Position numbers and translations under genes: made by a program. The notes below the pieces were generated by a model. It saw nothing but the letters and a program-made list of their open reading frames with translations. It had not been told where the DNA came from and did no database searches. DNA of 49,272 nucleotides from Klebsormidium nitens (lineage: Eukaryota > Plantae > Klebsormidiophyceae): assembly GCA_000708835.1 (NCBI GenBank), contig DF237578.1, positions 1 through 49,272 of the forward strand. The letters run 5' to 3'. Position 1 is the stretch's first letter, and every line of letters begins with the position of its first letter. This document shows, one piece after another, positions 10,101 to 47,106 of this stretch.

Positions 10101-12421
10101 GCCACACTGCTCTCCATCGCCGCTTTCTCCTTCTTTGCCTTCTTCTTACTGCTCTTGCTCTGCTTAGGCTCCGCCTCCTTCGCCAGTAGCACTACACTTT
10201 CCCCCTTCTCAGCCGCCTGCGTCTTCCCCTCATCTGCTGCCCCTCTCAACTTCTCCGCTGCCTCCTTTGCTTCCTTCACTGCCCTGGCCCTCTCCTTCTC
10301 CTTCAACTCTAGGCTCTTGCGTCGCCCCTCCTCCTCTTTCTTTTTCTTCTCCTCCTCTTTCTGGCGCTGCTTCTCCTTCCGCTTCTCCTCCCTCTCTCGT
10401 TGCTCCTTCTCTCGCAGGGCCTGCTCCTCTTGCTCCTTCTCAACCCTCTTCCGCTCCTTCTCGAGATCCAGCTGCTTCTTCAGCTCCTTCTTCTTCTGCT
10501 TCCGCTCCCTGTAGAAACCCTTTGCATTTCAGTTTGTAAGGTCAACTCAAACCAGACTGCAAGAACCGGGTTGTGATCGAAACTGCAGCTGCCTTGAATC
10601 TACGATCAAATGCATAAATTCCCCGGGTTGTCAGGTAGAAATTGCAAACTGACAACAAGGGGATTGCTCTAAAATTAGCAGTCCACCGTGCACACAGATC
10701 AGCAACCTGCTCATTAGGGTTTCCTGCAGACTTAATCTAAATTGGCATGCAGGATATTTCTCATGGTGTTGGACACCAAGCACGCAATTAGCAAGATCAG
10801 CAGTGTTCTAAAAGGGGGAACATCCTCCATCAAGCACTCGGCCTCCCACGAAAGCTCAAGGGTCAACTTGCCTTTCCGGTTGAATCAGATTATGACCTGG
10901 TTAAGGGAACAGAGTCCAACAAGTCCTTGACAAAACTCTCCTGCCCGGCAATTGCCCCAACAAGACAGCACCAAGTTGTTAATTTTACAATGAGAGAGCA
11001 AACCCCTCACCTCTCTTTCCGAGCCTTGTTCTCCCTTCTCTCCGCCTGCAGCTTCTCCTCCTCTTCCTCCTCCTGCATCAGCTGCTCTTGCTTCTCAAGC
11101 GCCACTTTCTCTCTGTAGGCCGCAAGCACGCGCTGCTCAAACATCTTAGCCGCGAACATCTGAAACATTCGGCGCCCCTCCTCGATTCTCTGCTCCTCCA
11201 GCAACTCCTCGTCCTCTTCCTGGTAGTTCTCATCATCGTACTCCCCTTCCTGTTCCCCATAACCGTACTGGTCGGGCATCGGCTCATACCCATTCTGCGC
11301 ACGGCCGTCTGCGAGCTTCTCCATGAGGGAAAAGAACTTGCGGCCATCATCCATGAGGAGATCATCGGCCACTGTAAGGACGCCTCCCTCCACAGCTGCA
11401 GGTTGAAGAGTGGAATTGTCAGGGTGACCCGTCAATAGTCAGAACTTGCAGAAAAGGCTTGATTTTAGTAGAAAACCGCAGACTTGGGAAGCGCAAAAAT
11501 CCAAACTGGGACACACTTTCTCGAACAAGATCAGTCACCTGGACTTTGAAAAGATCGTCCTCTGCAACCAACATCACGGGCCACGGGCGAAATTTTGCTT
11601 TGGTCGGAATGAGATCAAGTGCTCAGACTATCTGGCCTCCTTTTCTGATGATAATGGTCCATACTACAGCAGTTGCAAAGGGATTGCCACAATTCAGCAG
11701 CGCAGACCACAGAATTCAAAGATCAAGCAATTCTGTAGAGAAATCTCACAATTGCATACTGCAAAAGGATGAAAAAGACTGATCCATCCTTAGCTTGATC
11801 GGCAGCCAGTCTTCCTCACAATTGGCCAAACTGTCAGCCCTCAGCTTCTCTCGTTGCGAAGACAGCTACAAACTGCAATTGGGGGATTGCTCTCGAGCTG
11901 GTGAATGATTTACCTTTCAGACTCAAGGACAGATCAACCTCGTCAGACTGATAGTCAATCATCTCAATATCGATCTCCCCAGAGTCCCCTCGATCCTCCA
12001 ATTCCGAGTAGTAAGCATCGTACAGCAGCTCCAGCTCCTCCTCCAAAACGGTCCTTCTCCTGCCACACACGCTGCAGGAACATATGTGTCGCTGCTGCTC
12101 CCTCATCTCCCGCAGGATGGACTCCTTCTCAATCCTAAGCAGCGACTGCCGCTGACTGTCGCCCAGCCCCAGCCAGAACTCCTTGAGCTTCTCCCGCTCC
12201 TTCGTCTCGCTCTCATCCCAGATGCCCCCCAGCTTCTTCTTCTTCTTAGTCCTGCCGTCGTCGTGCCACCCATTGTTGTGGCCATTACTCCTATCTCCGT
12301 TCCTGTACCTCGGCGGGTTTGGCCCAGGGTAACAGTAGCAGGACATGCTTCTGCACTCTGCAGCATGATCCTCATGATCATCACAACACGTGTGGTAATG
12401 CGGTTCGCTGCTGGAGCACAT
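7158..12421 (-). CDS. NST1-domain (stress response / salt tolerance down-regulator-like) protein with coiled coil, long Pro/Gly-rich IDR and C3HC4 RING finger; 4 exons, ~1235 aa
   Basis: Exons 12421-11914, 11395-11011, 10508-9950, 9413-7158 (3708 nt, phases 1/2/0 consistent). NST1-type motifs: IWDESETKEREKLKEFWLGL...EKESILREMREQQRHICSCSVCGRRRTVLEEELELLYDAYY, GGVLTVADDLLMDDGRKFF, EEQRIEEGRRMFQMFAAKMFEQRVLAAYREKVA. RING CLLC-x11-CLHLTCVGC-x13-CPFC at about 7871-7746. The start codon and last intron boundaries are less certain. Confidence 0.85.
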
Positions 12422-12940
12422 TTTGCTTCACTTAAACAGGCCTGACTTGCATACTACAGCAGGAGCCAATCTCACAGAGCAATGCACCAATGTTTGTAAG
12501 CAACATCATAACACGCCAAGGCGTTGCAGCGAGGGCACATATGAGCACAATTCTCTGCAGCTGGCACAGAAGTTGTCTCACATAGAGAGAAAGATGAGCG
12601 GGCGCCCCGTGCGTTTCAAACCTGGGGTGTAGTAGGAGCTGAGGATCAAAATGGGGGCCCTAAATTCGGACAGGAAGCAAGGAGGAAGGGGGAGATCCCG
12701 AACTGTCCTAGTCAGTTTCGCGTTCAAGTTTGATCCGATTGAGACTCGTTCACACCAACGGTTGAACTGCCTCATGAAGGTAGTGTGAACTGGCTCCATT
12801 GCAGTCGCCCGCGCCAAAAAGTGGCCCTTCTGATTGGCCGCCCCGGAGTTCGTTCCCGGCAGATATTTGCGTTAGCAAAGTTCGTTACCAAGCTGGTTTC
12901 TCTTGCCCGGATCATCGCCCCGGGATCCGAGATTAGCTGG

Positions 12941-28474: not shown

Positions 28475-29436
28475 GATGGAGGATTGCCAATACGCGGATG
28501 CTGGTAGCTGTTTGACTCTTACTTGCTAGTTGTTGATTGCTGGCGTTCAGATGCTGATTAGTGTTTGATTGCTCATTCCCAGTTCCTTGAATGATTGCTT
28601 ACTGCCACGTCTTGAGACGACTTTCCAGCTTGCTGATTTCTAATGTTGGGACAGCGCAGGCAGCCTATGGCCTGAGCAGCACGCAACTGGAGCAAAAGCA
28701 CACTCTTATCAAATGGATGAAAGACACAAATCAGGTTGTTGCAAAGAGGAACGGCAGAACAAACATTCTGTCCGCTTGGCCGTAAAGCGAAACGCCGTCC
28801 TGACCTGCCACAATGAATCCTAGGCTTATTGCGTAAGGCGCCAATTGCTAGGAGCTGAAGCAGTGAAACTTCAGACCGCCTGGCGCTATTATATGACCGT
28901 TCTAAAAGTCTGAGTGACTGCCCCCATCAGCTCGGCCCAGCTAGCCATTCTGCAGGGCCATGAAGAAGTGGTGCGCACTGCGGACAATTCAGCCCTGCCC
29001 TAGCCCTGCTGAATTCAATATAATAGCTGCCCGGTAAAAGACCGCCGGCTTTCGGGACCGGCAACCGAAACTTCTCCTTAATGGTTTTAAATCCAAGAAA
29101 ACGGCAAACCGTTCCAGCACCCACGACGATTCGGGCAAGGCCCCGGGTGGTTGGCGTCTCCAGATTTCTCTCATATTAAAGCTTTTGCACCATCTTTTCT
29201 TCCTGGTCCATTCTTCAGCGTTCAGTTAAACTTTCAGCCTCAGCCTCACTGCCCTCAGCCTCAGGTCTTCTTCAGCCTTCAGGTGCATTTCGTGGCGACG
29301 GAGGAGGGGCTGGACATGAGCTTGTTTTCTCCAACTTTTGCATAGTTAAAGTCTTGTTAGTAATGGCGTCTGCGACCACTTCACTGTAGGCGGAATCCGC
29401 AGTGCTACTGCTAGCCATTGCCCGCCGTTTCGATCA

Positions 29437-32163
29437 ATGGCCCCGTTGATGCGCCGCTCGAGGCGCAGCGCCTGGCCCCTCTCCACTCTAGTTCTCTCCG
29501 CCTGCATCGCTCTCTTCCTTCTCTGCCAAGTCCTCCTTGCATACCAATTCTTATGGCGGTCCGCAAACTCTGTCACTAATCCCGATTCAAATCAAAAGCT
29601 CTCCCTGGGGTTCATCAGCCTGGGAGACAGCGTCCCTGCACTTAGCATCATCATAAGCGTCATTGGCGCCAGCGAACGAGAGTACTCCAAGGGTTTCGAC
29701 GCATTAAGAGCCGTTTTCAACAAGGCAAAAGGTTTTCTAGAGGGGGTGGAAGTCGTGATTGTTCACGCCGGAGTGGTAACCGCCCCAAGGCTGACCAACT
29801 TTGGGGATGGGAAACCCAATTGGAGCGTGCAATACGTGCTGCTGCCACGGGAGCCCTCTCACCCAGCTGCCTGGAACCTGGCCATACGGCACTACGCCCG
29901 GGGGGCTTTCTTAACCAAGCTGGACTTTGCTGGGTTTGTGAGGGGGGAGGTCACGCAGATTACGCTGCAAATGCTGGAGAAGAAGGTGCAGCTCTTGCAG
30001 TCGCTGCCGCTTGCGCAGGTGGCTTTTGCAAAGTTTGGGAAGGGAGGAGGAAGTGCGATCAAGTCGTCGGACTTCTTCTCGTTTGATGAGACGAAGAAGC
30101 CAATCGCTGGGTTAAGTCTTGAGCTAGATCGGAGCCCTGTTTGGCGGCAGAGTCTGCACGAGGCGGTTGGTTACTTTGACACAGGGTTAGCGTCCGCCGC
30201 AGAGTGGGCGTTCTGGCTCAAAGCACTCCAGCATGGACTGCAGGCGGTCCGCTTGACTGACGACCCGCTAGGGCTGATGACTGCAGCAGAGCCCAGTGAA
30301 AGTGAGGAGCTAGCAGTGGTTTCAAAGTATTTGTTCGGCGGGCTGGTTAACCTGACTGCGGGCGTGACCCAAAAAGCGGAGGCCTCAACCCAAAAAGCAG
30401 ACGGGTTGAGGATTCTGGTGATCCACGAGCACGTCCCATTTCGCAACGAAGGGGGGGAGAAGCGGCTAATGCAAGTGGTGCACTCGCTAATAGGAAGTGG
30501 CCACAAGGTATGGTACCTCTACAGGGGGTGGGGCGCCAAGCCAGCGCACAGGGCAAAGCTAGAATCTCTAGGCGTTCAGCTGATACCGGACTCGCATCTC
30601 ACGGATCCACGCTCTGAGATTCGGACCCTTCAGAAGCCAGCTGTGTACTTCGAAACCCACGACTTCGACGCCGCGGTCATGACGGCGTGGTTTTACAAGC
30701 AGAACGAGACCGCAGGTTCACTGGCCCTGTCCATCCCGGAGGTGTACTCCCCGCTTATGAGGACATATAACCCACGGAGCTGCGTTGCGGTCCTTACTGA
30801 CGACGTCCATTGGAGCCGGAATCTTGATTCCGTTTGGTGCCATAAAGACGAGGGGCCCGAGTGTTTTAGGAAGCTCAAGGACCGTGAGCAAGCAGTCTAT
30901 CTAGACGCGGACGTTTTGTTCACCGTCTCGGAGTCCGACAGCCGATTTCTCGAGGCGTGGCTCCCCCCCCTCGACCCCCGCCCCCAGTTCCTCCCCTTCG
31001 TCGGGACACTTAACCGCGATAACCGTGCTTCTAACCCACTCTCGCAAAGGGAGATCATCACTTTCGTGGGCTCTAACCACCCCATCAACGAGGCGGGTTT
31101 GAGGTGGTTCTTTGACGAGGTCTTTCCAGTTCTGCAAAATCTGCTAAGGCCTCTGCCGGATGTATACTTGATCGGAGAGGGGTGGAAGGATAGCCCGCTG
31201 TCGAACCCTCTGGGGGTGTGGGCGCCGGGGCTGCTCAAGAGCGACTCTGAACTGGACAAGTACCTGCAGAGGACGCGCGTCTTCATTTCGCCGATGGTGA
31301 AGGGAACTGGTAAGTTCCACTTCAAGCCAAGCTGTTGCTTTGAACATTTCATATCGATCCATAAAGACAAACTGGAAGTCTGTCAAAAATACTGTTCGAT
31401 GATTTTCCGTTACACAAAGATGTGTCAGGCCTACTCGAGATGTCTGAGTAGTCGTCCATCTTTCAATGCTTCTCCCCTTGCTTTTTCGTTTACTGGCTCC
31501 GCCATGCTTTGTCTGGCCTGCACTCCCTCTTCTCGACTTCAAGGCATTGGACGTTTCTCTCTTATGAGATACAGGTTCAGCTCTGGCAAATCATCGCCAT
31601 CGCATCTGCAGGGTTTGACTCATGCTGACATCGACTTTACCGTGCCATTGTCACCTACTTGCCTTCGTCACCAGCGTTTGGTTTAGCATCAAAAGTTCCC
31701 ACTCGATTTGAATCCCCCGCAGTCTCCTACCCATGATCAAACTCCCTTATTGTGCGCCCTTTAAGCTTATAAGAAGAGGGAAGGTTTGACTTCGTCGTTA
31801 TCACGGGCTGCTTGAAATGTTTCTTTCAATCGTTACATTCCCGGCCACAATGTAAGCCCCAGCATCTCCCCTGCAGGCGTCGCAACCAAGAACGTCCTGG
31901 CCATGGAGAACGGGATCCCCCTGGTCACGACCACGTGGGGCAAGAGGGGGCTCCTGGTGCGGGAGAACGAGCCCCCCTTTCTGATTGCGGACCACCCGGC
32001 CGACTTCGCCGGGCACATCATCCGGCTGTTTTCAGACGATCACTTATGGCACGAGATGTCAGACGCCGGCTTATGGCATGTGCGCCACGTGCTGAACCCG
32101 GGCCTACAGGGTGCGGTGTTGGAGGGGCAGCTGCGCGAGTGCGTCGCCCGGAAGCGGGGGTGA
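29437..32163 (+). CDS. Type II membrane-anchored bifunctional-like glycosyltransferase (GT2/GT-A-like plus GT4/GT-B-like); 2 exons, ~719 aa
   Basis: Exons 29437-31309 and 31877-32163 (2160 nt; the junction gives KGTG|VATKNVLAMENGIPLVTT, a typical GT-B C-terminal motif). The N-terminal TM is TLVLSACIALFLLCQVLLAYQFLW. GT-A-like AWNLAIRHYARGAFLTKLD and SPVWRQSLHEAVGYFD. GT-B-like LRILVIHEHVPFRNEGGEKRL and FVGSNHPINEAGLRWFFDEVFP. Confidence 0.85.
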
Positions 32164-34629: not shown

Positions 34630-37600
34630 ATGACTCCCTCACCTGCATCCGGCGGTCAGAGTTTCCCCGGTCGTCCATGTGAAGAACGTGCTGTTCGCTG
34701 TCATGCGGGCGTACCTACTACTGACGTCACGGAAGGCATAGGTATTAGGTACTAGAGTCATATGCGCAGTATGGACTCCGGAACGAGAGCACTCCCCCTG
34801 GCCCGAAGGTTGCGGCAGTAACATCGATAATGTGGGTGCACTGAGCAAGGCGTACATTCTACGCTTTTCGACTTCCAGAAACACCAAGCTTGTGCACTCC
34901 AGGTTGCACGATTCAGGCCTCTGTTTCGAAAAAGCAGGGCACGAGAAAAGGAGATAAGAAAGTAGCGGCTTTTGAAGGACATGTGACAAAACTGGTCAGA
35001 AGCGCTACAAACCTCTTTAGTTGACGCAGTGAGAGTGGGGCGACAGGACTAACTGAAGGCATGAAAGAATCGTAAAGGCCATCTTGATCTGTAATGTCTG
35101 GGTTTGAAATTGCAACTTTTTGGACGCTCTGAGATTTTGCAAGGCAAATGGCAAGGTGCCTGACTGGTTCTTGACCTCAGCCACCTCTGCCACTTAGTGT
35201 TCCACTCAAAACAAGTGCTTTTCATCCAGGGCGTCAGCTGGAGCTTGCACTGAATGACAACAAGCCAACATGGATCCCAGAAAACAGGGTCATGCAGGTA
35301 AGCGCTTTCAGTGGTCAGGTGCTTTCCTGGCCTTTCTTGTGCAGCTCAAGAAAGGACTTGGAACATTCTGGAAGCTCCACATTGCCAAAGCTGGCTGCAG
35401 AAAGGAAGTGTCAACTGGTTGTGAAACTGCCCTTCCTTTTTGCCGTGAATGCTGCATAATTGCACGGGGCATTTGCGCACCAAAAGAAAATGTGACAAGA
35501 GAGAAACAGGATTGACATCACTCTGATCAGATCTTCCAAATGAGAACATTGAAGCATCGAAGGTTTCGGTTTGGATGTGACCCCTGCTAATGGAAAATGC
35601 TGGAGAGTGACCGACATGGCCCTTGTACGGCATTCAGTGGGTAAGAGCCAGTCCAAACGGCTTTGCTTGTAGCTCATACTGCTATTCTGACATGTGCTTA
35701 ACACATCTTTGCAGGCTCTGGCTCCAGGAGTTCCAAGCAATTACCAAGGGTGGTGTGTCAGCATTTCCAGAGGGGAACCTGCAAATATGGTGACACATGC
35801 TTCAAATCTCACACTCGTGATCCTGGTTCTACGTCACAGGCGGGAGCCTCCTTCTATCAAAGACAGGCCCAAAGCAGGGACTTCTTGGAAGTAGCTTTGA
35901 ACCAAGCAGATCCTTTCGTAGGCAGACCCGAGATGATGGAGAGGTTTGTGAGAGCCGCTGCCGAGAAGGAAGACGTAGCTCAGCTGCTTCTCTTGTTGGG
36001 AGACGATGCAAAGTACGGGCGCAAGCACATCAGAAGCATCGCACAATTTGCAGCGGAAAGCTCAGCCAGTGTCTCTGGCACAGGCCACTTCGAAAGGCTG
36101 ATCCTTCCTCTGCTCAAACTTCTCACCTCCCCGGGGTTCACCAACTCTCCGCTCACAGCCTGTAGCACCAAAGTCTATGCTACTCTCTCCGAGGTCGAGG
36201 GACTCCAGGGCTACCTCATAGACAGACTCAAGGAACTAGTTCTAGCCAGCGAGGGAAGAAGCAGCCCTAGCCAAGCACAGCAAGCAGAGCTCGAACCAGC
36301 GGTTGAAGCTGCTCAGACTGTTTCAGCATACTTTCTGCAGAGCTGCATGCTTTTCAGGGACAAGGTGCATCAAGACCGGATGCAGCAGCACGTGCGAGAT
36401 CTTGCGAACCTGGTGGACCAGTGCGTCACAGATCTGAGGCCGCCAGGACACCTTGTGGTAAGTGCAGCTACCATGTGTTTTAGGGGGAGATCTTTGAAGA
36501 GACATGGAATACAAAATTCAGTAGTCAACAAGTTCTTGTCTGGAAAGGAGGGCCATCCCTCTTTTGGCAGAATCTAAACCCTAAATTTGCAACATTCTCG
36601 AGATCTTGACTGTGTGCTCAATCAGATATGCACTTACAGCAATCTGTTCAGATCCGCTTAGTCGTCCATGAGCATAAGCTATTTGAGATGTTAAGAGACA
36701 ATGATAGTCAGAAATTGAATAAGATGAAACGGGTCTTGCAATGTGAAGTAGTGACCACCTGAATTGTTTCTCTGTCCTTGACCACCACCTTTCTGTTGCG
36801 GAAAATGCTGTCTGCTTCCAAATCTCCGTACAATTCCATGTTCAGATCAGTCCTATTTTCGACCGAGAAGCTTGACATCTGTGCAGTCACTCGTTTCGAG
36901 ATGGTCACCTTATTAGAAACGATTCTTTCCAGATTTACAAAGCTGATGTTCGTCCGATTCTGACCTCGGACGTACAGTAATTGCCAAAGCTTGCTCGGAA
37001 ACCCCACGGGGTCAAAGAAGTTGTCGTCTTCTGCACTGTCGTCAAGCCAGAGCATGAAAGCCTAAGACGCTTTTCTACTGACCAAACCTTGTTAAAAAAG
37101 ATCCAAAAGCCCTAACTCAAAGCTGCTGGCTATCGTGCAGCGCCGCTTACAAGGCCCGCTGGAAATCCTGCTGCGTATGGTGGGCCTGGCCGACGAAGCC
37201 GAAGCGAGGTTCTCAAAGCAACAACAGCAGCTCGCGCAGAAGTCAGCGGCTCCCTCCACCGTCACGCATGTAAAGGTATCTCTCTCCGGCTTCAACTCCT
37301 TCCGCAAAGAAGCTTCGTTCGGACAACCAAAGGTTCTTACGTTCTTCACATCTTTGCTTCAAGTTGATGTCCCCACTGCATGATGGCCCTACCTTCTGAT
37401 CAACCCTGCGTTACCGATTTGAAAGCTCTAACTCAAAGCTGCTTGTTCTCTCGCAGCGCCGGTCACAAGGCCCGCTGGAGGTTCTGCTGCGTCTGCTGGG
37501 ACTGGCCAACGAAGCCGACGCGAGTTTCTCGAAGCAGCAACAAAACCAAGCCGGACCTTCATCAACTCCTATCGCCGCCTTGCCCGACCTCGGCGTACCA

Positions 37601-40600
37601 GAAGACGGTCCCGGGCACCTAAGCGAAACCGGAGAGCCTCGACACGATAACGACTTCGAAGATTTTCGCGCCATCCTCGTTGCCCCCACCCCCGCCGAGG
37701 TCCTCTCCAACCGGGATCCCTTTCTGCCGGCCAACGTGCGCCCGGGGCTGCCGGGCAGCCAGCACCATTTGCCTCGGGGGACTGTCGACCGGCACCTCGA
37801 CGTGCACTTCCGCCTGCTTAGGCAGGATCTGATGGGGCCCCTTCACGACAAGGTGCAAACCGTCCTGGAAAGGGGGGTCCGTCGGCAGTGGGCCGGGGGG
37901 GGGGAGGCAGACCGATGGGGCGGGGGTGAACCAGGTGGATGTGATTCATTACGACGATGTGAGAGTGGAGTCGGTGAAAGGCAACGCGCACGGCGCCTGT
38001 TTCGTGCTGAGCTTCAAGGAGCTTTCGGGGGTCGGAAAGGGGAAACAACGCCGGTTGGAGTTTTGGGAGAACAGCTCGCGGCTCGAGTTCGGGTCGCTGG
38101 TGTGCATCTTGCGCGCCGGCGTCGGCGCCGGAAACGCCCTCGGTCTAGTTTTCGCGACCGTCACGGAGAGGGACCCGAAGCAGCTGGCGGAGAGTCGGCC
38201 GTGCATCGGCGTCCGTTTGTGCAACAGCCGGGATGAGCACTCTGCCGGCGAGTTCATCGCAGCGCTTCAGTCCAGAAACCAAACGGGGGGCGGGCAAGCG
38301 GACTCGGGGGCCATTTTAGTAGAGGCTTCCGGGAGCTTCTTCTCATACGAACCCACCCTGAAGGCTCTCCAGAGACTGACGGAGGGCAATTTCCCCTTCT
38401 CGCGCTACATATGCCGGCAGCCCAACGATGGCGAAGTTAATGTAAGCGCTCCTGCTTATCTGACGGGGACGACGTCTTATGACCTCAGCTTCTTGGCGGG
38501 GGGTTCGACCGGTGTAACGGAGCAGTCCCGTCGAGAACTAGAAAACGTCCCGGTTGGAAGGCAGGGCGGTTTTCCAACCGGGTTGCTGGTGAAGACGACG
38601 TCCCTGGACGAGCCCCAGGCGCGCGCGCTCGCGGCCGCTCTTACCGAGGAGCTGGTTCTGATCCAAGGGCCTCCTGGCACGGGAAAGGTGAGGGGATACA
38701 TCTCGCTCTTGTGTCAGCAGCTTAGGATTGAAGCATTTGCTGGAGATTTTGTGAAGGTGCTCTCGGCAGATTCACTGTCCCGTTGGATCAATTCTTCATA
38801 CGTGCTTCGCTTCCTGTAAAGCGCCATGGGAATCAGGCAAATGCGTCTTCATGCTCGAAAAAGGAAACCCGCATCTCGTTTTCTCGGCCGACACGTTTGC
38901 CTGGACCTCCAGTCTGTCCCATGTCACTTGACACACATTGTCAGAGCGTCAGCAAGCTTGTGGTTAATTTGTTTAAGAGATTTCTTCCAATTTCGTCAAC
39001 GAATTTGTCAGTAGAATCTTTCAAAATTCATACGAATCTGTCGTCAACGAGTCTTGGTGACCTGTGTTTCGGAGTTTGTTTGGTTCTATCACGCCTTCCT
39101 TGCAGATTGCGACCTGGAAAGGCGTCCGTCCGCTTTTCTTGACCTTTCAAGAAGTTTGAACAGGCTGATGTGCTTTGCGATGCTGACGTCAAGACACCTC
39201 CGCATTTTCCGCAGACTTTTCTGGGCATCAAGATCGTGCAAGCGCTCCTCCGCAACAGCGGCTCCGCGCCCCGCGGCCGCGTCGCACCCCTCGCTGGCAC
39301 CAAGCCGGCCTTAGGACCCATTCTCTGCGTCTGCTACACAAACCACGCGCTCGACCAATTCCTGGAAGGTCTGCTAAAAGCGGGGGTCCAAAAGCTGGTC
39401 CGCGTGGGGGGGCGCAGCAAATGCGAGGCCCTGGCCCCCTTCAACCTTCACGAGCTCCGGCGGAATGCGGGTTCCAAGGCCCGGGAGCAGAGTCGGAAAG
39501 AGGCCGAGTGCTTGGGGCAGATTAGAAGGTACGAGGAGTCGTTCGCGCAGACGTCCGCACTGTCCGCGCGCGCGTTCCTGCACTGGTCCGACGTTTCGGA
39601 CCTGATCGAGATGGAGGCCCCCGGGCTGTACACGTCGCTGAGCCGAGGAGCGGCCGATGAGGATTCGGAGGGGTTTATCACGGAGGGGCACTTTTGGGAC
39701 CGGTGGCTCGTCAACCCGGGGCAGAAACGAGCGGCAGTCAGGGCCCCCCGGAAAGAACCCGACCTGGTCAAGCCAAACCCGTTTGCCATTCTGGGGGGGT
39801 TGGGCGAGTGCGGGCTTTTGAAGGGGGAGGAAAATGTCCACGTCGAGGGCGCGGCAGACGCCGCAGAGGTGGGAGAAAAGATGCAGGCAATGCGTTTGAA
39901 AGGCGTCTCGGGAGTGGGAGAACACGGGAGCGGAGGATCAACGGGGCCGCGTGCAAAGGGGGATCCCTCTAAAAAGCGAGTCAAAAAGCCCCTATCCAAC
40001 CGGCCGGTGGAAGTTCTTCTACGCGAAAGGGACGCGTGGAGCCTAAGTATGAGGGAACGAAGGAAGTTGCACGATCGTTGGCAGCAGGAGCGATTGAGAG
40101 TCGGGCGTGAGCAGCTTCTCGCGGGAATTAGGCGCTACGAGGAGTGAGTGTCCGCTTCTTAAGCGTGGTCAAATGGTGGATTATTATAACCTGAGTGGTT
40201 TTTGGGAGTCTGAGTTAGGCTCTTCCTTTGCACTTTGTTCTAAGTTGAGCCCGCCGTTCTTGATGTAAATACAAAGCCATACCCGGAGTGATTTCAGTGG
40301 TTTGTGACGCGAGTCTTCCGTGACTATTCCCAGCAGAAATGAGAAAGTCGAATGGCCGTTGCTGTTAGCGGGGTCAAAGGCAATGAATCAGCATTTTGTA
40401 ATGCTCTGAAAGGTCTGTGAAGCAAAAAATAAGTCTCAAGAGACATATTTCCTTTCTTGCATGTTTGTCGCTATCTGGGGTGCCTCATTTGGACTGCATG
40501 ATCTTTGAGCAGTCCCTTCTTGACTCCTTCAAACATCACGAACGCAATTTTTTGTCAGAACCTTTGGTCTTTACATTTCCCTTCGGAGAGGCTTTCGGTA

Positions 40601-43600
40601 AGACATCAGATTCGGGACTCAACCCACTACCTAGCACGTTTGCCAAAGATTGTTTCTCTCTTTGCCTTGCGCTGATCACCAGATTCCGCTCTCCAGGCTA
40701 CGGCACGAGCTGCGCCAGACCTGGGATCTGACCGACTTGCGCATCCTGCAAGGGGCGCGGATCGTGGGGATGACGACCACGGGCGTCGCCAAGCAGCAGC
40801 AGCTGATCCAGGCGCTCGGGCCCAGGGTCATCGTGGTCGAGGAGGCCGCCGAAGTGCTGGAGGCGCACGTGCTGACGTCACTGTCATCGAGGACGGAGCA
40901 CGTTATCCTGATCGGTAAAGAGCCGCCCAGCACGATCTCGCAAGTTTGTGGAGATTCTGCAAGCCTGTATTAGGATCGCAGGAGTAGGCCTTAAATTGAT
41001 GGCCAGGCGACCCAGGAGGAATGATTTGCGTTGGATTTTCTGGAATCAGGCTTGGCTTCTGCCGCGGCTTCTGAGTTGCATCTTCGACTGTAAAAGTACA
41101 CGTAGTTTTCACCGTCTTATGGTACAGCCGTAATGCCGGAAAGAGGGAAAGATTAAGATACTCGAAAGTAAAGCGCTTGATGAAAAATGTCGCGGGGAAC
41201 CCCTTCCGGATCTATCCCACAAGGCCAGTAACTTGTCCGCAGAACCTTTGCATGATCGAGTGTTGCAGCGATGAAGATTCCGAAAGGGAAGCTTACGTCC
41301 TTCACTTTAGAATTCTCAGAGCAGAAAACCAGCGAAGGGCCAGACTGATCGAGTGTTCTCCAAATTGGCAAACTGAATAAAGAAGGAAATAGACAGCAAA
41401 ACAGCTTAATCTTCTCGTTTCACTCTCCTTTCAGGCGACCAGGAGCAGCTGCGGCCAAAGACGGAGGTCTACGAGCTGTCCGTCGCGTCGCGCCGCGGCT
41501 ACAACCTGGACGTCTCGCTCTTCGAGCGCCTGATTGCTGACGTCAACTTCCCGGTCTACACGCTGACGACGCAACGTCGCATGGCTCCCGCAATCTCCAA
41601 CCTGGTCCGGCAAACGGTTTACCCGACCTTGAAAGATGCACCGAACGTAATGCGGTACGGACCGGTCCCCGGGATGTTCCACAACCTGTTCTTCTGGGAC
41701 CATGACCACGCGGAGAGGAGCCGAGACGCGGAGTCCATATCGTTCGCCAACCGAGCTGAAGCGGAGATGGTGGTGGGGCTTGTGGCGTATCTCCTCCGCC
41801 AGGTGAGTTGAGATTATCCCAGGTTTAACAGGCTGGCTTGATAACTGGTTGTACGGTAATCAGTTTTGATTCGGCTTCAGATCTGTTTTGAAGCTGCTTC
41901 GAAGCCTGCTTTAGACGTCGCTCGAAACGGTGTGACACCGTCTTAGATTCTGTTCTGGTGAAAGGGATGGAGACACCGCTTCATTACTACTCGGAGCCCA
42001 GTCTGAAAGCTGCTTCATGCAAGTGCGTCTTCTGAACTTTCACTTTATTCAAAGCGCTTTCAGAATGCGACAGTGCTAAACGTTTTGTATTTAAGAGATG
42101 CGAACCGTCCAGACGGGTGAGGTATCGTCGTCCGGCCAAGTGATCGCTTCTGCTATTCGTCTTCTGCGTGATCTAATCCTTCTGGTGCGAGTTGATTCAA
42201 GTTTACCTATGGTTCGCGACAAGGACTGTGCAGAGTACTCACTCAGTTGTTCAAAGTCGGAGTCAACGTTCGTGCTCTCTGTTAGTCCGTTGCTTGCTTA
42301 CTCATCATCAACTCAGGAAGGAGTCGGGAATGGCGAATACATCGCCACTCGTAAATCAGTGACACTAGAACGAAGATGCCGCTTTTACAACCGCCGGGCC
42401 AAACCAGCACATGAAAGTCCTCCTTTTCCCAGGGTAAGGCGGTCGGCGAGATCACGGTCCTGACGCCCTACCTCGGCCAGCTGCGCCTGCTACGCGAACT
42501 CCTGTCGAAGCAGGTGGTGGTTCAAACCGAGGAGCGGGACGCCGAAGCGCTGCAGAAAGCTGAGGAAGCAGCGGAGGCAAGGGCAGGCGCAGAGGGGGAA
42601 GGCAAAGCGCCGCCAGAGGAGCCTGTGTGGGGCGCCGTGGTAAAGAGGACGACCGCGAAGGAGAGCGTCCGCCTGGCGACTGTCGACAAGTGAGGTCTCA
42701 CACCTAGTTGCTTGAGGGGTCCGTTACGCAAAAGTACACGTGTGCGTAGGGTGACTTTTCATGAATCTCCGGGAGCGGCTTGATTTCAAGGAAGAATATT
42801 GGGCATATTCTGGATCTGGACACTGTAAGGCGAACGGGTCTTAATAAATGGGGCTTTCTAGGGTTTGAAAGAGCTTGTATCTGCAATTTCTGAGCGCCTC
42901 AAACTCAAGTTTTCGATCTGACAATCCCCTGGAACGCGAAAAAGTCTTTACGACTGCGTCCACTTTTTGTCTTCCCGTACAGCGGACGGCGCTTTGCTGG
43001 TGCTAATCCTACTCGGAGTGCTGGAGTCTGTACTAAACTTGTCTTTGATTTGAAATTCTAGCTTTCAGGTTTCCACTTCGTATACTTTGTAAGCAAGTTC
43101 GTTGCCGTCGATCCAGAGATTTAGTAATGACACTCAGACGTTGCTGTTGTGCTCAGCCTGGCGGGTATGCAGATGTTTGGAGACGGTGATCGTCTACATT
43201 GTACCAAGTAACCAGAAGGAACTCCAACTTGGATGCAAGGGGTTCATTCTGACTGCTGAAGAGACCGACGCCTGTTCCGGCTCCACGAGCCAACAAGATC
43301 GTACCCTTCGAAGTACTCTCTTGTGTCGAATCACTCAGGTTTGAGCACTCGGACTTTACAAAGTTTCTGGATCATCAGCCGTGAGATCGTTCGCAGACCA
43401 CATTCGTCAGGCGTTACGACTCCTGATGCAGCTTCCAGGGCGAAGAAAGCGACGTCGTAATCATCTCCCTAGTCCGGAACAACGAGAGAGGCTCCGTGGG
43501 GTTCGTCAAGGAGAAGAACCGCGCCAACGTGCTCCTGTCGCGCGCAAAGAAGGGGATGTACCTCGTCGGAAACGCGGCGACCCTCGGCGCAAACCCGTCG

Positions 43601-46600
43601 GCCAAAATGTGGCCCCAGGTCCTCAGGTAGGGGTGTCCGGCGAGGATTTGGAGATGATCGTCTATTAAAGCACCCAGCCTGAATTATTGTCCGTGTTGAC
43701 TCGAAAAGGCGTGTCTGCTCAGAAGGCAAAGGTGTCTGCTGACGGCTGGTTGCTGACGTCAGCACTACGAAACTGTCTGTCTCTGCGTTGACCGCATGGT
43801 GTGTATGCTTTTTGACCGTCGATTGAACCAACTGGCGGCTGAATCTTGTCATACCACTGGTACTGCTCGAAGTTTGTTCTGTTGGGCGGCTCGAAGAAGC
43901 AGGTCACCAGAGTGAGAATGGAAGCATGTTATTGACTGAGCCAGACGTAATTCGATACAACCACAAAACAATACGTTAAAACTGACGAAATTGCTTCGTC
44001 ACTCCCTGAGATCCACCCAGTATTTAAAACACTCTTTAGAACGATAGATGAGCCTTGGAAATCGGCATCCATCTTGCTGGACAAGAGCATGATAAATACC
44101 GCATTCTAGTTTTTGGTCCGGTATCCTGTTTTGATTCTTGACAGCGGCCAAAGCTGCGCCGAGGATCGAATGCATTCCCTTCTGGTCTGATTGAACGTTT
44201 CATTTCAAACCCCTCTCTCTCAGGTTGATAGCGGACGGCGATGGAGTGGGGCCAGCGTTACCGGTCGTCTGCCAGAACCACCCCGAGACGAAGACGCTGA
44301 TTAAAGAAGCCAAAGACTTTCAGGAGCTGGTGGGCGACGGGGGCTGCTCGCTCAAGTGCGAGTTCCGGCTGCCGTGCGGCCACGACTGCCCGAGAAGGTA
44401 TGGTCACTTCATCTGCCATGTACAAAGTATAGACTCGCCCAGGATCCGGGCCAAAGCGTAACAGAATAGAAAGAGCCGTGAAAATCCATTTTACTAGTGG
44501 ATCACATTTTGCCCCGAGGTGCGGGTGCTCGGGTAGCAAGGTGTCAAATTCGCCTAACCAGAAAGGAAATGATGCAAGAGGAATTTTCAGTGCCTTTGCG
44601 GACGATACATTCTCTTTGCTTTCGTACCGGATTGGTCCCACAGTTGTGCTTCGTCTGACACCTTGGAAAACGGCGCAAATCAGGGAAAGCTGCATTGTTA
44701 AGCTACCATAGTGGTTTTGAATGGACCAAAGGCTGATAGACAGTGGCTCTCTTAGCATCCCTGTTTCGCATCGAAGCTCAATAGCGAAGTAGCTCAAATG
44801 CTTGTTTGAACTCCGCAAACTGGAGACGCTGGCGTGAGCACGAATGCGCTTCATGTGCATGATCGTCAAAGTGTGCAGGCTTTCTGTATGCCTATTATTT
44901 CAAGCCGCCGCACCCCAAAAGTGAGAGCGCTGACCTTACTTTTCTTTTCAGGTGCCACGTGGACGACCCTCAGCACGTGTCCGTCCACTGCCCGAAGCCC
45001 TGCCTCCGGCTCCGCCAGGTCACGGAGTGCCCTCATCAGCACCCGTGCCCTCGCCTCTGCGGCGACGAGTGCGGCCTCTGCCACGTGTCGCTCCCAGAAG
45101 TCCCGCTTCCCTGTGGACACGTGGCTAGGGGCGTGAGGTGCGCGGTTGCCCAAACCCCAGAAGCCATTGACTGCCGCGAACTCGTCGCCGGAGCCAAAGT
45201 AGGTCATTGTGGCCACGATCTTCCCCCGATCGCCTGCGCAGAAGTTCAGAAGCTGAAAACGGACCCCTCTCTGTGCCCGGCAATTTGCGGCGCGTCGCTT
45301 GAGTGCGGCCACGAGTGCGGGGAGCCCTGCGGCAGGTGTTTGAACCGGACGCTCAGAAACCCCCAAACCCCGCGCGACGCTGACGCGCCGCTTCCCCAAA
45401 GGTCCAACCACGGGACGTGCAAGAAACCCTGCGGGCGCACGTTCGCCTGCGGACATTTTTGCAAGCGCCTCTGCCACGCCGGGACAGAGTGCGGGCCCTG
45501 CCCCGAGACGTGCATTGTCAAGTGCGCGCACAGCGCTTGTGGGCAAAAGTGCGCCACGCCCTGCGCGCCCTGTGCGGAGACCTGCCAGTGGGCGTGTTCA
45601 CACCGCGGGGCATGCACCGCCCCCTGCGGGGCGCCGTGCGACCGCCTACCCTGCGACGCGCGGTGTGAAAGGGCGCTCGACTGCGGGCATCGGTGCCCCG
45701 GGCTGTGCGGGGAGGACTGCCCGGAGGGGCGGGTCGCCTGCCGGGATTGCTCGGTGAAAAATGACCACGTGGTCGACCTCGTCATGATGACGTCGCTGGG
45801 GGAGCACGACCCGGAGGAGGAGCCCCTCATCACGCTCTCGTGCGGACATCCTTACACCGTGTCCACCTTGGACGGGCACCTGGGATTGGAGACGGTCTAC
45901 GAGCGGAGTTCCGCAGGCGGAGCGGAAGCGGAACGCGGGGAGTGGCTTGGCGTGAAACCGCTGAGCGACATGTTTCAGAACGTGAAGGGCTGCCCTGACT
46001 GCCGGGCGCCGATCAGCGGCGTCAAGCGATACGGCCGCATCTCGAAGAAGGCGCTGGTCGACCAAGCGCAGCGGCAGTTCATCCAGAACTCGCAGCGCCA
46101 GCTGGCCAACGTCTTCGACAGAGTCGGCACAGTGCGCGAGGAGGTGAATGGGGTCGTGGCCCGCGGCGAGGCGCCGGCGCCTGCAACGTCGCAGGTTCTG
46201 TCTGCGCGTCTGGACCGGCTGTTTGCGGACTTCGAAACGATCGCGCGAGAGTGCGCGAGGCCCCCCACGGTCAAAGTGTACGAGGCGACCCTGGCGAGCA
46301 TCAAGCGCGCGGCTATGCACGAGGCGGAAGGGGGGAATGAAGAAGGGCTGCTCTTGGCACGGGCGAAAGGGCTGGCCGTCCCACCTCCTGACGTCAGCGC
46401 CAGCTGCGAAGCCCTGATTGGCCTAGGCGAGATCGCCGAGCTTGCGATGCGCTTAGCCGCGCACGCGGTTGTCCACCGGCCGACTGCGGGTCCTGGTCGG
46501 GGCAAGATGGGCGACCCGAAAGACGATGCAGATCAGCGCTACAAGTCGGCCTTTCAGAGCGCCGCCAGTTACTTCTCGGGAGCGGCGCGCCTCGCGCGCG

Positions 46601-47106
46601 GCAGGAAGAACCATTGGACCGAGGCACGCACGGACCTGGCGTCCGCGAGGCTGCTCGTGGCGTGGGTCAGGTGCACCGGGGCGATCGTCGGGGCGGGAAG
46701 GAAGCCCGCGACGGACTTGGAGGGCCAGCTGGCAGCGCTGGCGGAGGCCCGGGAGCTCAGCGCGCGCGTCGCGGTCCACGAGATGCGGTCCGTCTCCGAG
46801 AACGCGGCTTTGGGCGGCGCCGCGCGCGAGCTTCTTGATGAGACGATTCCGAAGTTGGTAGAGGCGGCAAGAGAGGGCTGGCGGGCGGAAGTTACGCTCG
46901 AAGAGAAGCGGGCGGTGATGGAAGCGATGGGGTTCAGGGCGAGGCACTGGTACGTTTGCCCCAACGGGCACCCGTATGCCATCGGAGAGTGTGGCGGGGC
47001 CATGCAAGAGTCGGTTTGCTACGAGTGCGGCGCCCGGGTAGGAGGCCGAAATCATCAGCTTACAGCAGGCAATCAAGCCTGGCATGAAACGGCGGGGGTA
47101 GCTTGA
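34630..47106 (+). CDS. ZNFX1: ZNFX1-like protein: CCCH finger, UPF1-like SF1 helicase, NF-X1-type zinc fingers, split RING-like module and C-terminal RZ finger; ~2097 aa if a 1-nt frameshift at 37895-37904 is corrected
   Basis: Exons (34630-34654 tentative), 35715-36457, 37457-38687, 39215-40143, 40697-40914, 41435-41802, 42433-42689, 43432-43626, 44224-44397, 44952-47106. Motifs: CQHFQRGTCKYGDTCFKSH, GPPGTGKT, CYTNHALDQFLE, VEEAAEV, GDQEQLRP, LTPYLGQ, TVDNFQGEESD, VLLSRAK, many CGHxC repeats, and HWYVCPNGHPYAIGECGGAMQESVCYECGARVGG. Confidence 0.88.
37100..37275 (+). repeat. Upstream duplicate of the acceptor and first ~35 codons of the ZNFX1-like exon at 37457; possible in-frame 135-nt cassette exon 37141-37275
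   Basis: Both copies follow aaagc(c/t)ctaactcaaagctgct. They translate as RRLQGPLEILLRMVGLADEAEARFSKQQQQ and RRSQGPLEVLLRLLGLANEADASFSKQQQN. The copy ends AAG|gtatct at 37275/37276. Confidence 0.85.

What the first reader, a model, noticed from the sequence alone, without database searches (positions are those of the whole stretch)
34630..47106. Complete ZNFX1-like RNA-sensor / ubiquitin-ligase in an apparent green alga
One ~2100-aa polypeptide joins a CCCH finger, a UPF1-like SF1 helicase with the EEAAE motif II characteristic of ZNFX1, a long NF-X1 Cys/His array, a split RING-like module (CGH at 45841 ... CPDCR at 45991) and an RZ finger (46945-47060). The RZ finger keeps the HxxxxGECG arrangement of the RNF213-type catalytic Cys. 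In animals ZNFX1 acts in antiviral RNA sensing and small-RNA inheritance, and RZ fingers are non-canonical E3 modules. I do not recognise this full architecture from flowering plants. It is the best candidate in the window for an undescribed RNA-triggered innate-immune or silencing system in the green lineage.
Basis: partly seen in the sequence, partly recalled or inferred. Interest (0 to 1): 0.78.

Follow-up and report, generated by a model that had tools for sequence, protein, structure and literature searches.

The report
Algal ZNFX1 RNA helicase–ubiquitin ligase gene
This is an intact, transcribed Klebsormidium nitens copy of ZNFX1, an RNA helicase joined to a ubiquitin ligase that occurs across most eukaryote groups; it is a genuine but fairly ordinary member whose public gene model misses its first RNA-binding finger.

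Summary
A 12-exon gene on the + strand (ATG 35270, stop 47104-47106) encodes about 2124 aa. The order of domains is: an N-terminal CCCH finger, the ZNFX1 domain, an SF1 helicase with the unusual EEAA motif II, an NF-X1-type Cys/His stalk, a one-zinc RING/U-box-like module, a helical linker and an RZ finger. The RZ finger has exactly the human spacing of zinc ligands and of the catalytic Cys and His.

Spliced transcript contigs from several studies show GT..AG joints, so it is not a silent pseudogene. An orthologous locus in a related alga conserves all but the duplicated third exon (dN/dS about 0.2-0.3). Human ZNFX1 is the best solved-structure match by far (E 1e-149, against 1e-25 for UPF1).

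It is not undescribed at sequence level. The window is a K. nitens scaffold and the gene is deposited as 'NF-X1 zinc finger and helicase domain protein'. That model starts 82 aa too late and loses the CCCH finger.

Full-length relatives occur in chlorophytes, other streptophyte algae, fungi, oomycetes, brown algae, amoebozoans and animals. No land plant appeared in either listed hit set. I found no paper on a green-lineage ZNFX1.

Verdict: a new member of a known kind, of modest interest.

The parts
34770..35269 (+). Probable 5' UTR (start approximate)
   Evidence: Transcript contigs carry 417-529 nt upstream of the exon 2 junction. An in-frame stop lies at 35255-35257, just before the ATG. 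The transcript start itself was not mapped.
35270..35297 (+). Exon 1 with the start codon; absent from the public gene model
   Evidence: The loose-end consensus of three runs joins it to exon 2. The ATG and donor are conserved in the orthologous locus L001.
35715..36457 (+). Exon 2: CCCH finger (C24-x7-C32-x5-C38-x3-H42, 35756-35812), then an N-terminal helical region
   Evidence: Pfam zf-CCCH E 3e-5. Contigs cover 35710-36456. The finger is conserved in L001. dN/dS is 0.27.
37141..37275 (+). Exon 3: a tandem duplicate of the start of exon 4
   Evidence: Joints on both sides. Direct repeat 37106-37226 / 37422-37542 at 84% identity. L001 has a single copy.
37457..37876 (+). Exon 4
   Evidence: Joint at its 5' side, and contigs run to 37876/37877.
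37877..37934 (+). Unresolved 58 nt: a mini-intron, or a coding loop with two G-run length errors in the draft
   Evidence: It is GT..AG and restores the frame. However, L001 is 90% identical across it and has 60 nt there, open in frame. No joint or read-through was listed.
37935..38687 (+). Exon 5: ZNFX1 domain (37938-38237) and start of helicase lobe 1 with Walker A
   Evidence: Pfam PF25396 and AAA_11. It aligns to human ZNFX1 chain 9q9z_A. Contigs and a joint support it.
39215..40143 (+). Exon 6: rest of lobe 1 and the long insertion between Walker A and motif II (the '1C' insertion in human ZNFX1)
   Evidence: Joints on both sides. No Pfam hit. Its ends align to human ZNFX1. About 360 aa separate Walker A from motif II.
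40697..40914 (+). Exon 7: motif II 'VEEAAE' (EEAA at 40839-40850)
   Evidence: Pfam AAA_11. Joints on both sides. The motif is identical to the human one.
41435..41802 (+). Exon 8: start of helicase lobe 2
   Evidence: Pfam AAA_12 4e-13. The 5' joint is seen. The 3' boundary is inferred from splice consensus, frame and homology.
42433..42689 (+). Exon 9
   Evidence: Boundaries are inferred and conserved in L001. They agree with public protein P0179.
43432..43626 (+). Exon 10: helicase motifs V/VI, with equivalents of human F1210, R1216 and R1223 (43502-43543)
   Evidence: Pfam AAA_12 4e-17. Alignment to 9q9z_A. Coordinates.
44224..44397 (+). Exon 11: start of the NF-X1-type Cys/His stalk
   Evidence: Boundaries are inferred. 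It aligns to the zinc-finger stalk of human ZNFX1.
44952..47106 (+). Exon 12: rest of the NF-X1 stalk (to about 45756), Miz/Z-RING-like module (45814-46047), helical linker (46048-46881), RZ finger (46927-47076) and stop (47104-47106)
   Evidence: Open frame. Pfam RZ 8e-23. RNF213 RZ alignment at 1e-10. AF2 model pLDDT 88.9. RING/U-box fold matches. dN/dS 0.22.

Best explanation
The locus is the vertically inherited ZNFX1 orthologue of Klebsormidium nitens, intact and transcribed.

By homology with human ZNFX1, I infer the following. It is a 5'-to-3' SF1 RNA helicase that is auto-inhibited until single-stranded RNA enters the groove between its two RecA lobes. A rigid NF-X1 zinc-finger stalk links the helicase to a two-part ubiquitin ligase. 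A one-zinc RING-like module (Zn site C1704/H1706/C1754/C1757, Arg1758 at the linchpin position) binds a charged E2. That module either discharges ubiquitin directly or passes it to Cys2087 of the RZ finger, with His2108 acting as general base.

The N-terminal CCCH finger probably adds a second RNA contact. Human ZNFX1 is not described as having one, but many non-animal members do.

The likely cellular role is surveillance of foreign or aberrant cytoplasmic RNA from viruses or transposons, by ubiquitin-driven clustering and/or by feeding an RNAi amplification step.

Shown here: gene structure, transcription, domain content, conservation of catalytic residues, and phylogenetic placement. Inferred: every biochemical activity and the biological role.
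For: - Domains: Pfam by exon and on the public protein.
- Closest solved relative: human ZNFX1 chain 9q9z_A at E 1.3e-149 in three stretches covering the ZNFX1 domain, both helicase lobes, part of the insertion and the zinc-finger stalk. The next best hit is UPF1/NAM7 at 1e-25.
- Functional residues, read from the alignment with the numbering: motif II is identical to human ('VEEAAEVLEAH'). The equivalents of human E1007, Y1043, F1210, R1216 and R1223 are all conserved.
- RZ finger: the C-x3-H-x6-C-x8-C-x2-C-x8-H spacing is identical to human C1849/H1853/C1860/C1869/C1872/H1881. It aligns to the RNF213 RZ finger at 1e-10.
- Miz/Z-RING-like module: C18, D28, C68, C71 and R80 are invariant and H20 nearly so across 46 diverse homologues. 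The pattern is that of the human Z-RING zinc site C1591/H1593/C1619/C1622. All 50 listed fold matches are RING, U-box or SP-RING-type domains, including Ufd2p and the Smc5/6-complex chain 7qcd_C.
- Transcription: GT..AG joints in contigs from four studies. One contig of about 5.5 kb runs on from 37939/37969 through at least exon 7/8, and its unlaid length fits the 3' end of the gene.
- Selection: the orthologous locus L001 conserves every exon except the window-specific duplicate exon 3, at 72-93% aa identity, with mostly unalignable introns and dN/dS 0.22-0.27.
- Descent: in the tree K. nitens groups with Chlorokybus and Closterium (SH-aLRT 95), next to a chlorophyte clade (98).
Against: - No activity was measured. 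ATPase, RNA binding, E2 binding and ubiquitin transfer are all inferred.
- The RING-like fold matches are individually weak (best Z 5.4; Foldseek E no better than 0.26). The isolated-domain model had a pLDDT of only 66.8.
- Pfam's zf-NF-X1 model did not report the Cys/His array.
- The acidic 'plug' helix that auto-inhibits human ZNFX1 could not be located with confidence in the variable insertion.
- The N-terminal dimerisation (armadillo) domain of human ZNFX1 was not tested.
- The stretch 37877-37934 is unresolved.
- Family members play different biological roles (antiviral in vertebrates, RNAi-linked in nematode and fungi), so the role in an alga cannot be read from homology.
Confidence: 0.85

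Rival explanations
1. The molecule is the same, but its main job is as a cofactor of small-RNA amplification, like S. pombe Hrr1 in the RDRC complex, N. crassa SAD-3 in meiotic silencing, or C. elegans ZNFX-1 in inherited RNAi. It would mark target transcripts for an RNA-dependent RNA polymerase rather than quarantine viral RNA with ubiquitin.
For: The non-vertebrate members studied so far all act in RNAi-related pathways. In the tree the green-algal sequences lie on the non-animal side, although the root is only a midpoint root and the deep nodes are poorly resolved.
Against: The alga keeps both ubiquitin-ligase sites intact and under purifying selection. By contrast, C. elegans ZNFX-1 lacks the RZ finger, and the S. 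pombe and N. crassa proteins were reported to lack the zinc-finger domain. The two roles need not exclude each other.
Confidence: 0.35
2. The long polypeptide is an artefact: two or more neighbouring genes wrongly joined, or a decaying pseudogene.
For: No listed contig bridges 37877-37938. The window has two 1-nt gaps relative to the orthologue there.
Against: - The frame is open over 6375 nt with GT..AG at every intron.
- Contigs splice the CCCH exon to exons 3-4. A separate contig of about 5.5 kb starts just after the gap and runs through at least exon 7/8 towards the 3' end.
- The same domain order occurs in hundreds of full-length relatives.
- dN/dS is 0.2-0.3 on both sides of the gap.
- The orthologue reads through the gap in frame.
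Confidence: 0.03
3. The gene reached the alga by horizontal transfer, for example from a fungus or a virus, rather than by descent.
For: Many of the best-scoring relatives are fungal.
Against: - In the tree it sits in a streptophyte-alga clade (with Chlorokybus and Closterium, support 95), beside a chlorophyte clade.
- It has eleven spliceosomal introns.
- Its composition is like the rest of the window.
Confidence: 0.03

Closest known systems
Human ZNFX1 (NFX1-type zinc finger-containing protein 1; PDB 9q9z)
   Same: Same order of ZNFX1 domain, SF1 helicase with EEAA motif II and a long insertion, NF-X1 zinc-finger stalk, one-zinc RING-like (Miz/Z-RING) module, helical linker and C-terminal RZ finger. 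The RZ ligand and catalytic spacing is identical. The RNA-contact and motif VI residues are conserved.
   Different: The alga has an N-terminal CCCH finger, which the two structural papers read here do not describe for human ZNFX1 (no occurrence of 'CCCH'). It has Arg rather than Gln at the RING linchpin position and a longer loop inside the RING-like module (47 against 25 residues between the zinc half-sites). The armadillo dimerisation domain and the plug helix were not identified here. Overall identity is low outside the motifs.
C. elegans ZNFX-1, S. pombe Hrr1 and N. crassa SAD-3
   Same: They belong to the same helicase family and are regarded as orthologues. All act on RNAs targeted by small-RNA pathways.
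   Different: C. elegans ZNFX-1 lacks the RZ finger. Hrr1 and SAD-3 were reported to lack the zinc-finger domain. The algal protein keeps the full vertebrate-like C-terminus.
Full-length ZNFX1-family proteins of other green algae (Chlorokybus, Closterium, Trebouxia, Bryopsis, Ostreobium, Raphidocelis, Gonium, Volvox, Chlamydomonas eustigma, Micractinium)
   Same: Similar length (about 1,960-2,670 aa). All carry the helicase; the RZ finger is present in most but not found in Bryopsis_a or Ostreobium. K. nitens groups with Chlorokybus and Closterium. Bryopsis_a and Ostreobium also show an N-terminal CCCH finger.
   Different: Closterium has several paralogues, two of them adjacent. Only one K. 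nitens copy was seen in the hit lists; the genome was not searched for paralogues. All are database predictions without a study behind them.
RNF213
   Same: Shares the RZ finger, with the same zinc ligands and the same catalytic Cys and His.
   Different: Only the roughly 50-aa finger is shared. RNF213 is a dynein-like AAA protein of about 5,000 aa, without an SF1 helicase or NF-X1 stalk.
UPF1 / NAM7 / SEN1 / Aquarius SF1 helicases
   Same: Same helicase fold and motifs.
   Different: They match far more weakly (E 1e-25 or worse, against 1e-149). They lack the NF-X1 stalk and the RZ finger; the reference human ZNFX1 paper describes the deviant EEAA motif II and the much larger 1C insertion as distinguishing ZNFX1 from canonical SF1 helicases.

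Membership tests
ZNFX1 family | UPF1-like SF1 helicase core (AAA_11 + AAA_12) | tested here: met
   AAA_12 at 1.5e-42 and AAA_11 at 5e-25 on P0179. Exon-wise hits.
ZNFX1 family | Deviant Walker B / motif II 'EEAA' in place of DExx | tested here: met
   'VEEAAE' at model aa 1050-1055 (40839-40850 for EEAA). The segment is identical to the human one in the alignment. The feature is defined.
ZNFX1 family | ZNFX1 domain (PF25396) N-terminal to Walker A | tested here: met
   E 7e-10, 39.3 bits against a cut-off of 27. It aligns to human chain 9q9z_A residues 410 onward.
ZNFX1 family | Very long regulatory insertion (1C) in helicase lobe 1, with an acidic plug helix | tested here: inconclusive
   The insertion is present: about 360 aa lie between Walker A and motif II, and its distal part aligns to human ZNFX1. 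The plug helix could not be mapped. Only a conserved N-x-F-x-x-L motif followed by acidic residues was seen.
ZNFX1 family | NF-X1-type zinc-finger stalk directly after the helicase | tested here: met
   P0179 1194-1382 aligns to the human chain through the stalk. About eight C-x-H-type units are visible. Pfam's short zf-NF-X1 model gave no hit.
ZNFX1 family | One-zinc RING/U-box-like E2-binding module (Miz or Z-RING) | tested here: inconclusive
   The C-x-H...C-x2-C site is invariant or nearly so across 46 homologues and has the same pattern as human C1591/H1593/C1619/C1622. All 50 listed fold matches are RING, U-box or SP-RING-type domains, but the best Z is 5.4 and the domain-only pLDDT is 66.8. 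E2 binding was not tested.
ZNFX1 family | C-terminal RZ finger with catalytic Cys and general-base His | tested here: met
   PF20173 at 8e-23. Spacing is identical to human. It aligns to RNF213 at 1e-10. C390/H394/C401/C410/C413 are invariant and H422 is at least 90% conserved in 46 homologues.
ZNFX1 family | N-terminal armadillo-type dimerisation domain | not tested
ZNFX1 family | RNA-stimulated ATPase activity and E3 ligase activity | not testable with these tools
   These need biochemistry.
RNF213 family | Dynein-like six-AAA core and E3 shell of about 5,000 aa | tested here: not met
   Only the 46-aa RZ stretch matches RNF213 chains. The ATPase is an SF1 helicase.
NFX1 / NFXL transcription factor-E3 family | N-terminal RING/PHD plus NF-X1 fingers plus R3H, with no helicase | tested here: not met
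   A helicase core is present, and no R3H or PHD hit was found.

The most novel reading that the evidence does not exclude
The complete RNA-helicase-to-ubiquitin machine recently shown to quarantine viral RNA in human cells is an ancestral eukaryotic defence or surveillance device. On this reading the green lineage kept it through the streptophyte algae, up to the Zygnematophyceae where it has multiplied in Closterium, and the ancestor of land plants lost it. Non-animal members, including this one, would carry an extra N-terminal CCCH RNA-binding finger as part of the sensor. Green algae would then be the only photosynthetic models in which this pathway can be studied, and its loss would mark a change in how plants handle foreign RNA.
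Probability: 0.3. Interest if true: 0.55.

Novelty: new member of a known kind. Interest (0 to 1): 0.3.

Why it matters
The ligase activity of ZNFX1 was only described in 2025-2026, and only for the human protein. This alga keeps every residue so far tied to helicase, E2-binding-site zinc coordination and RZ catalysis, under purifying selection. That indicates the coupled helicase-ligase design is ancient and not a vertebrate immune invention.

Three points have practical use:
- The public K. nitens model should be extended by 82 aa to include the CCCH finger. Other public models in the family may be truncated in the same way.
- The family is present in chlorophytes and streptophyte algae but did not appear in land plants here. 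If confirmed, that is a clean gene-loss event to date.
- An earlier, unchecked note of this scan says the same genome also carries an RNF213-like RZ ligase. If so, both kinds of RZ-finger enzyme coexist in one alga.

None of this overturns current understanding.

Tried and rejected
- Pfam at E up to 10 on the last exon and three other pieces found no zf-NF-X1, RING or U-box model. The Cys/His array and RING-like module therefore had to be judged by alignment and fold.
- Foldseek with the whole 438-aa C-terminal model returned only meaningless helical-bundle matches such as 14-3-3 and designed repeats.
- The RING-like domain folded alone gave a weaker model (pLDDT 66.8) than within the whole module (blocks of 87-96). 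Foldseek with it gave no E below 0.26.
- The length-limited word search with the last exon could not see full-length relatives. They were reached through the exhaustive search and then with a Closterium protein as query.
- Paper searches for ZNFX1 together with plants, Viridiplantae, algae or named green genera found nothing on a green-lineage ZNFX1. This reflects the open-access library only.
- dN/dS for two further exons failed because of a frame offset in my script and was not repeated.
- Complex prediction was not used: no eukaryotic E2 was available as a session sequence, and the report does not rest on a binding claim.
- The third word search and the atlas search were not spent, because their best-hits-only output could not prove absence from land plants.
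- The joined spliced protein was built only inside scripts. There it was used to check the frame and to compare locally with the public protein and with locus L001. It was not sent to any database search. Those searches used exon references or the public protein P0179.
Full report
**What is in the sequence**

The + strand between about 35.2 and 47.1 kb holds a string of open frames. Scanned one by one by reference, they hit zf-CCCH, the ZNFX1 domain (PF25396), AAA_11, AAA_12 (three pieces) and ZnF_RZ-type (8e-23).
- the Cys of 'CGH' is at 45841;
- the first Cys of 'CPDCR' is at 45991;
- the RZ finger spans 46927-47076.

Walker A reads 'GPPGTGKT'. Motif II reads 'VEEAAE', the deviant form reported for human ZNFX1.

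**Gene model and transcription**

Eighteen public runs from six studies hold up to about 58% of the sampled words of 41100-47100. That share is close to the exonic fraction of the stretch.

Contigs from four of these studies were laid on 35600-41599. They give five GT..AG joints: 36457|37141, 37275|37457, 38687|39215, 40143|40697 and 40914|41435. Their loose ends match window 35263-35292. This places a 28-nt first exon, with the ATG at 35270, in front of exon 2, which starts at 35715.

One contig joins the 5' UTR, the CCCH exon and exons 3 and 4. Another, about 5.5 kb long, starts at 37939/37969 and is laid through at least exon 7/8; its remaining unlaid length fits the rest of the gene to the 3' end.

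The four downstream introns were set by splice consensus, frame and homology. They agree with the public protein.

The joined frame is 6375 nt with one stop at its end (2124 aa), and every intron is GT..AG. All database searches used exon references or the public protein.

**One unresolved spot**

Positions 37877-37934 can be read as a 58-nt GT..AG intron that restores the frame. The public model uses a different 58-nt intron (37853-37910), which the contigs contradict because they continue to 37876.

However, the orthologous locus L001 is 90% identical straight through this stretch. It has 60 nt there, open in frame, and the window differs by two single-base gaps, both inside G-runs. So the stretch is either a real mini-intron or a coding loop with two homopolymer errors in the draft. 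At most 20 aa in a variable loop are affected.

**Identity of the organism and the gene**

A search with a Closterium relative returned 'NF-X1 zinc finger and helicase domain protein [Klebsormidium nitens]', 2042 aa, on a contig of 49,272 nt. That is the length of the window. Earlier notes of this scan had also named K. nitens.

The deposited protein equals my model minus the first 82 aa, apart from 8 aa at the small intron. It starts at an internal Met and so lacks the CCCH finger.

The finger is real:
- it is on the spliced contigs;
- its ATG, donor site and all four ligands are conserved in L001;
- the exon has dN/dS 0.27.

**Family membership**

Against solved structures, human ZNFX1 (9q9z) matches at E 1.3e-149 in three stretches. 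These cover the ZNFX1 domain, both helicase lobes, part of the long insertion and the zinc-finger stalk. UPF1/NAM7 follow at 1e-25.

I corrected for the 87-residue offset of the deposited chain. The alga then keeps the equivalents of human E1007 (catalytic), Y1043 (base stacking), F1210 and R1216 (RNA binding) and R1223 (motif VI).

The RZ finger has exactly the human spacing of zinc ligands, nucleophile Cys and general-base His. It aligns to RNF213 at 1e-10.

**The RING-like module**

That domain has one zinc site, C-x-H...C-x2-C, followed by the linchpin residue. In the alga the site is C1704/H1706/C1754/C1757, with Arg1758 at the linchpin position.

These residues are invariant or nearly so in 46 diverse homologues. 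The whole C-terminal module folds with pLDDT 88.9.

When the domain is searched alone, all 50 listed matches are RING, U-box or SP-RING-type domains. They include the Ufd2p U-box and chain 7qcd_C of the Smc5/6 complex. The scores are weak, however (best Z 5.4). I therefore rate this feature as likely but not proven.

**Distribution**

The exhaustive search found 3152 relatives of the C-terminal module, 462 of them below 1e-30. Many are 1,800-2,300 aa long.

Named full-length relatives include:
- Chlorokybus, several Closterium paralogues, Trebouxia, Bryopsis, Ostreobium, Raphidocelis, Gonium, Volvox, Chlamydomonas eustigma and Micractinium;
- many fungi, oomycetes and brown algae;
- Pelomyxa, a sea urchin and a fish.

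No land plant appears among the 22 hits of the length-limited search. None appears among the best 120 of 2567 hits to a Closterium query, although a bryophyte orthologue would be expected to score near K. nitens. This suggests loss in land plants but does not prove it, because only the best hits are listed.

In a 39-sequence tree K. nitens groups with Chlorokybus and Closterium (SH-aLRT 95), beside a chlorophyte clade (98). That pattern fits vertical descent.

By a motif pattern search, an N-terminal CCCH finger is present in 42 of 169 full-length public models. The strict RZ spacing is present in 132 of them. The CCCH count may be low if other models are cut short at the N-terminus like this one.

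**How it most likely works**

By homology with the human enzyme, the sequence of events would be:
1. RNA entering the helicase groove relieves auto-inhibition and stimulates ATP hydrolysis.
2. The rigid zinc-finger stalk holds the ligase module.
3. The RING-like domain recruits a charged E2.
4. Ubiquitin is either discharged directly or passed to the RZ Cys.
5. The resulting chains drive clustering of the protein with its RNA, and its own turnover.

None of this was measured here.

Whether the algal protein serves antiviral or anti-transposon quarantine, RNAi amplification (as for Hrr1, SAD-3 and nematode ZNFX-1), or both, is open. Retention of both ligase sites under purifying selection argues that ubiquitin transfer matters in the alga.

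**Novelty**

The gene is deposited and named. Its domains are in Pfam. The literature already says that most eukaryotic genomes have one orthologue.

I found no paper on a green-lineage ZNFX1 in the open-access library.

What is new here is small:
- the corrected N-terminus with the CCCH finger;
- RNA and orthologue support for the full architecture;
- conservation of the 2025-defined ligase residues;
- the apparent absence from land plants.

I rate it a new member of a known kind, with interest 0.3.

Noticed in passing
window 37106-37226 and 37422-37542: A 316-nt-spaced tandem duplication (84% identity) created exon 3 as a copy of the start of exon 4, so the protein carries two copies of a roughly 34-aa helical motif ('RR.QGPLE.LLR..GLA.EA'). 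The orthologous locus L001 has a single copy. Both copies are spliced into the transcript.
   Followed up: partly
window 35270-35932: The public K. nitens protein (P0179) starts at an internal Met at 35933 and so omits 82 aa, including the CCCH finger. Other public models in the family may be truncated in the same way, which would undercount N-terminal CCCH fingers.
   Followed up: yes
window 37870-37907: Two G homopolymer runs differ by one base each from the orthologue. This may be homopolymer-length error in the draft assembly rather than a real 58-nt intron.
   Followed up: partly
Closterium proteins P0170 and P0172 (CLOM_g9207, CLOM_g9208), and P0023, P0171, P0173, P0175: Closterium species carry several full-length ZNFX1-like paralogues, two of them with adjacent gene numbers on one contig. 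Such an expansion is more typical of defence genes than of housekeeping helicases.
   Followed up: no
window 39215-40143 (exon 6, helicase insertion): Within the otherwise variable insertion, a short N-x-F-x-x-L motif followed by acidic residues is shared by green algae and several fungi. It could be the counterpart of the acidic plug helix of human ZNFX1.
   Followed up: partly
window 29350-31683 (+): A 778-aa open frame just upstream on the same strand has no Pfam match. The transcript contigs show that it is not part of the ZNFX1-like gene.
   Followed up: no
window 7161-9434 (-), 11837-12427 (-), 1918-2550 (+): Other coding pieces in the window: a C3HC4 RING finger in a 758-aa frame, an NST1 (salt tolerance down-regulator) domain at 9e-41, and a glutamine amidotransferase fragment. 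None shows a link to the finding.
   Followed up: no
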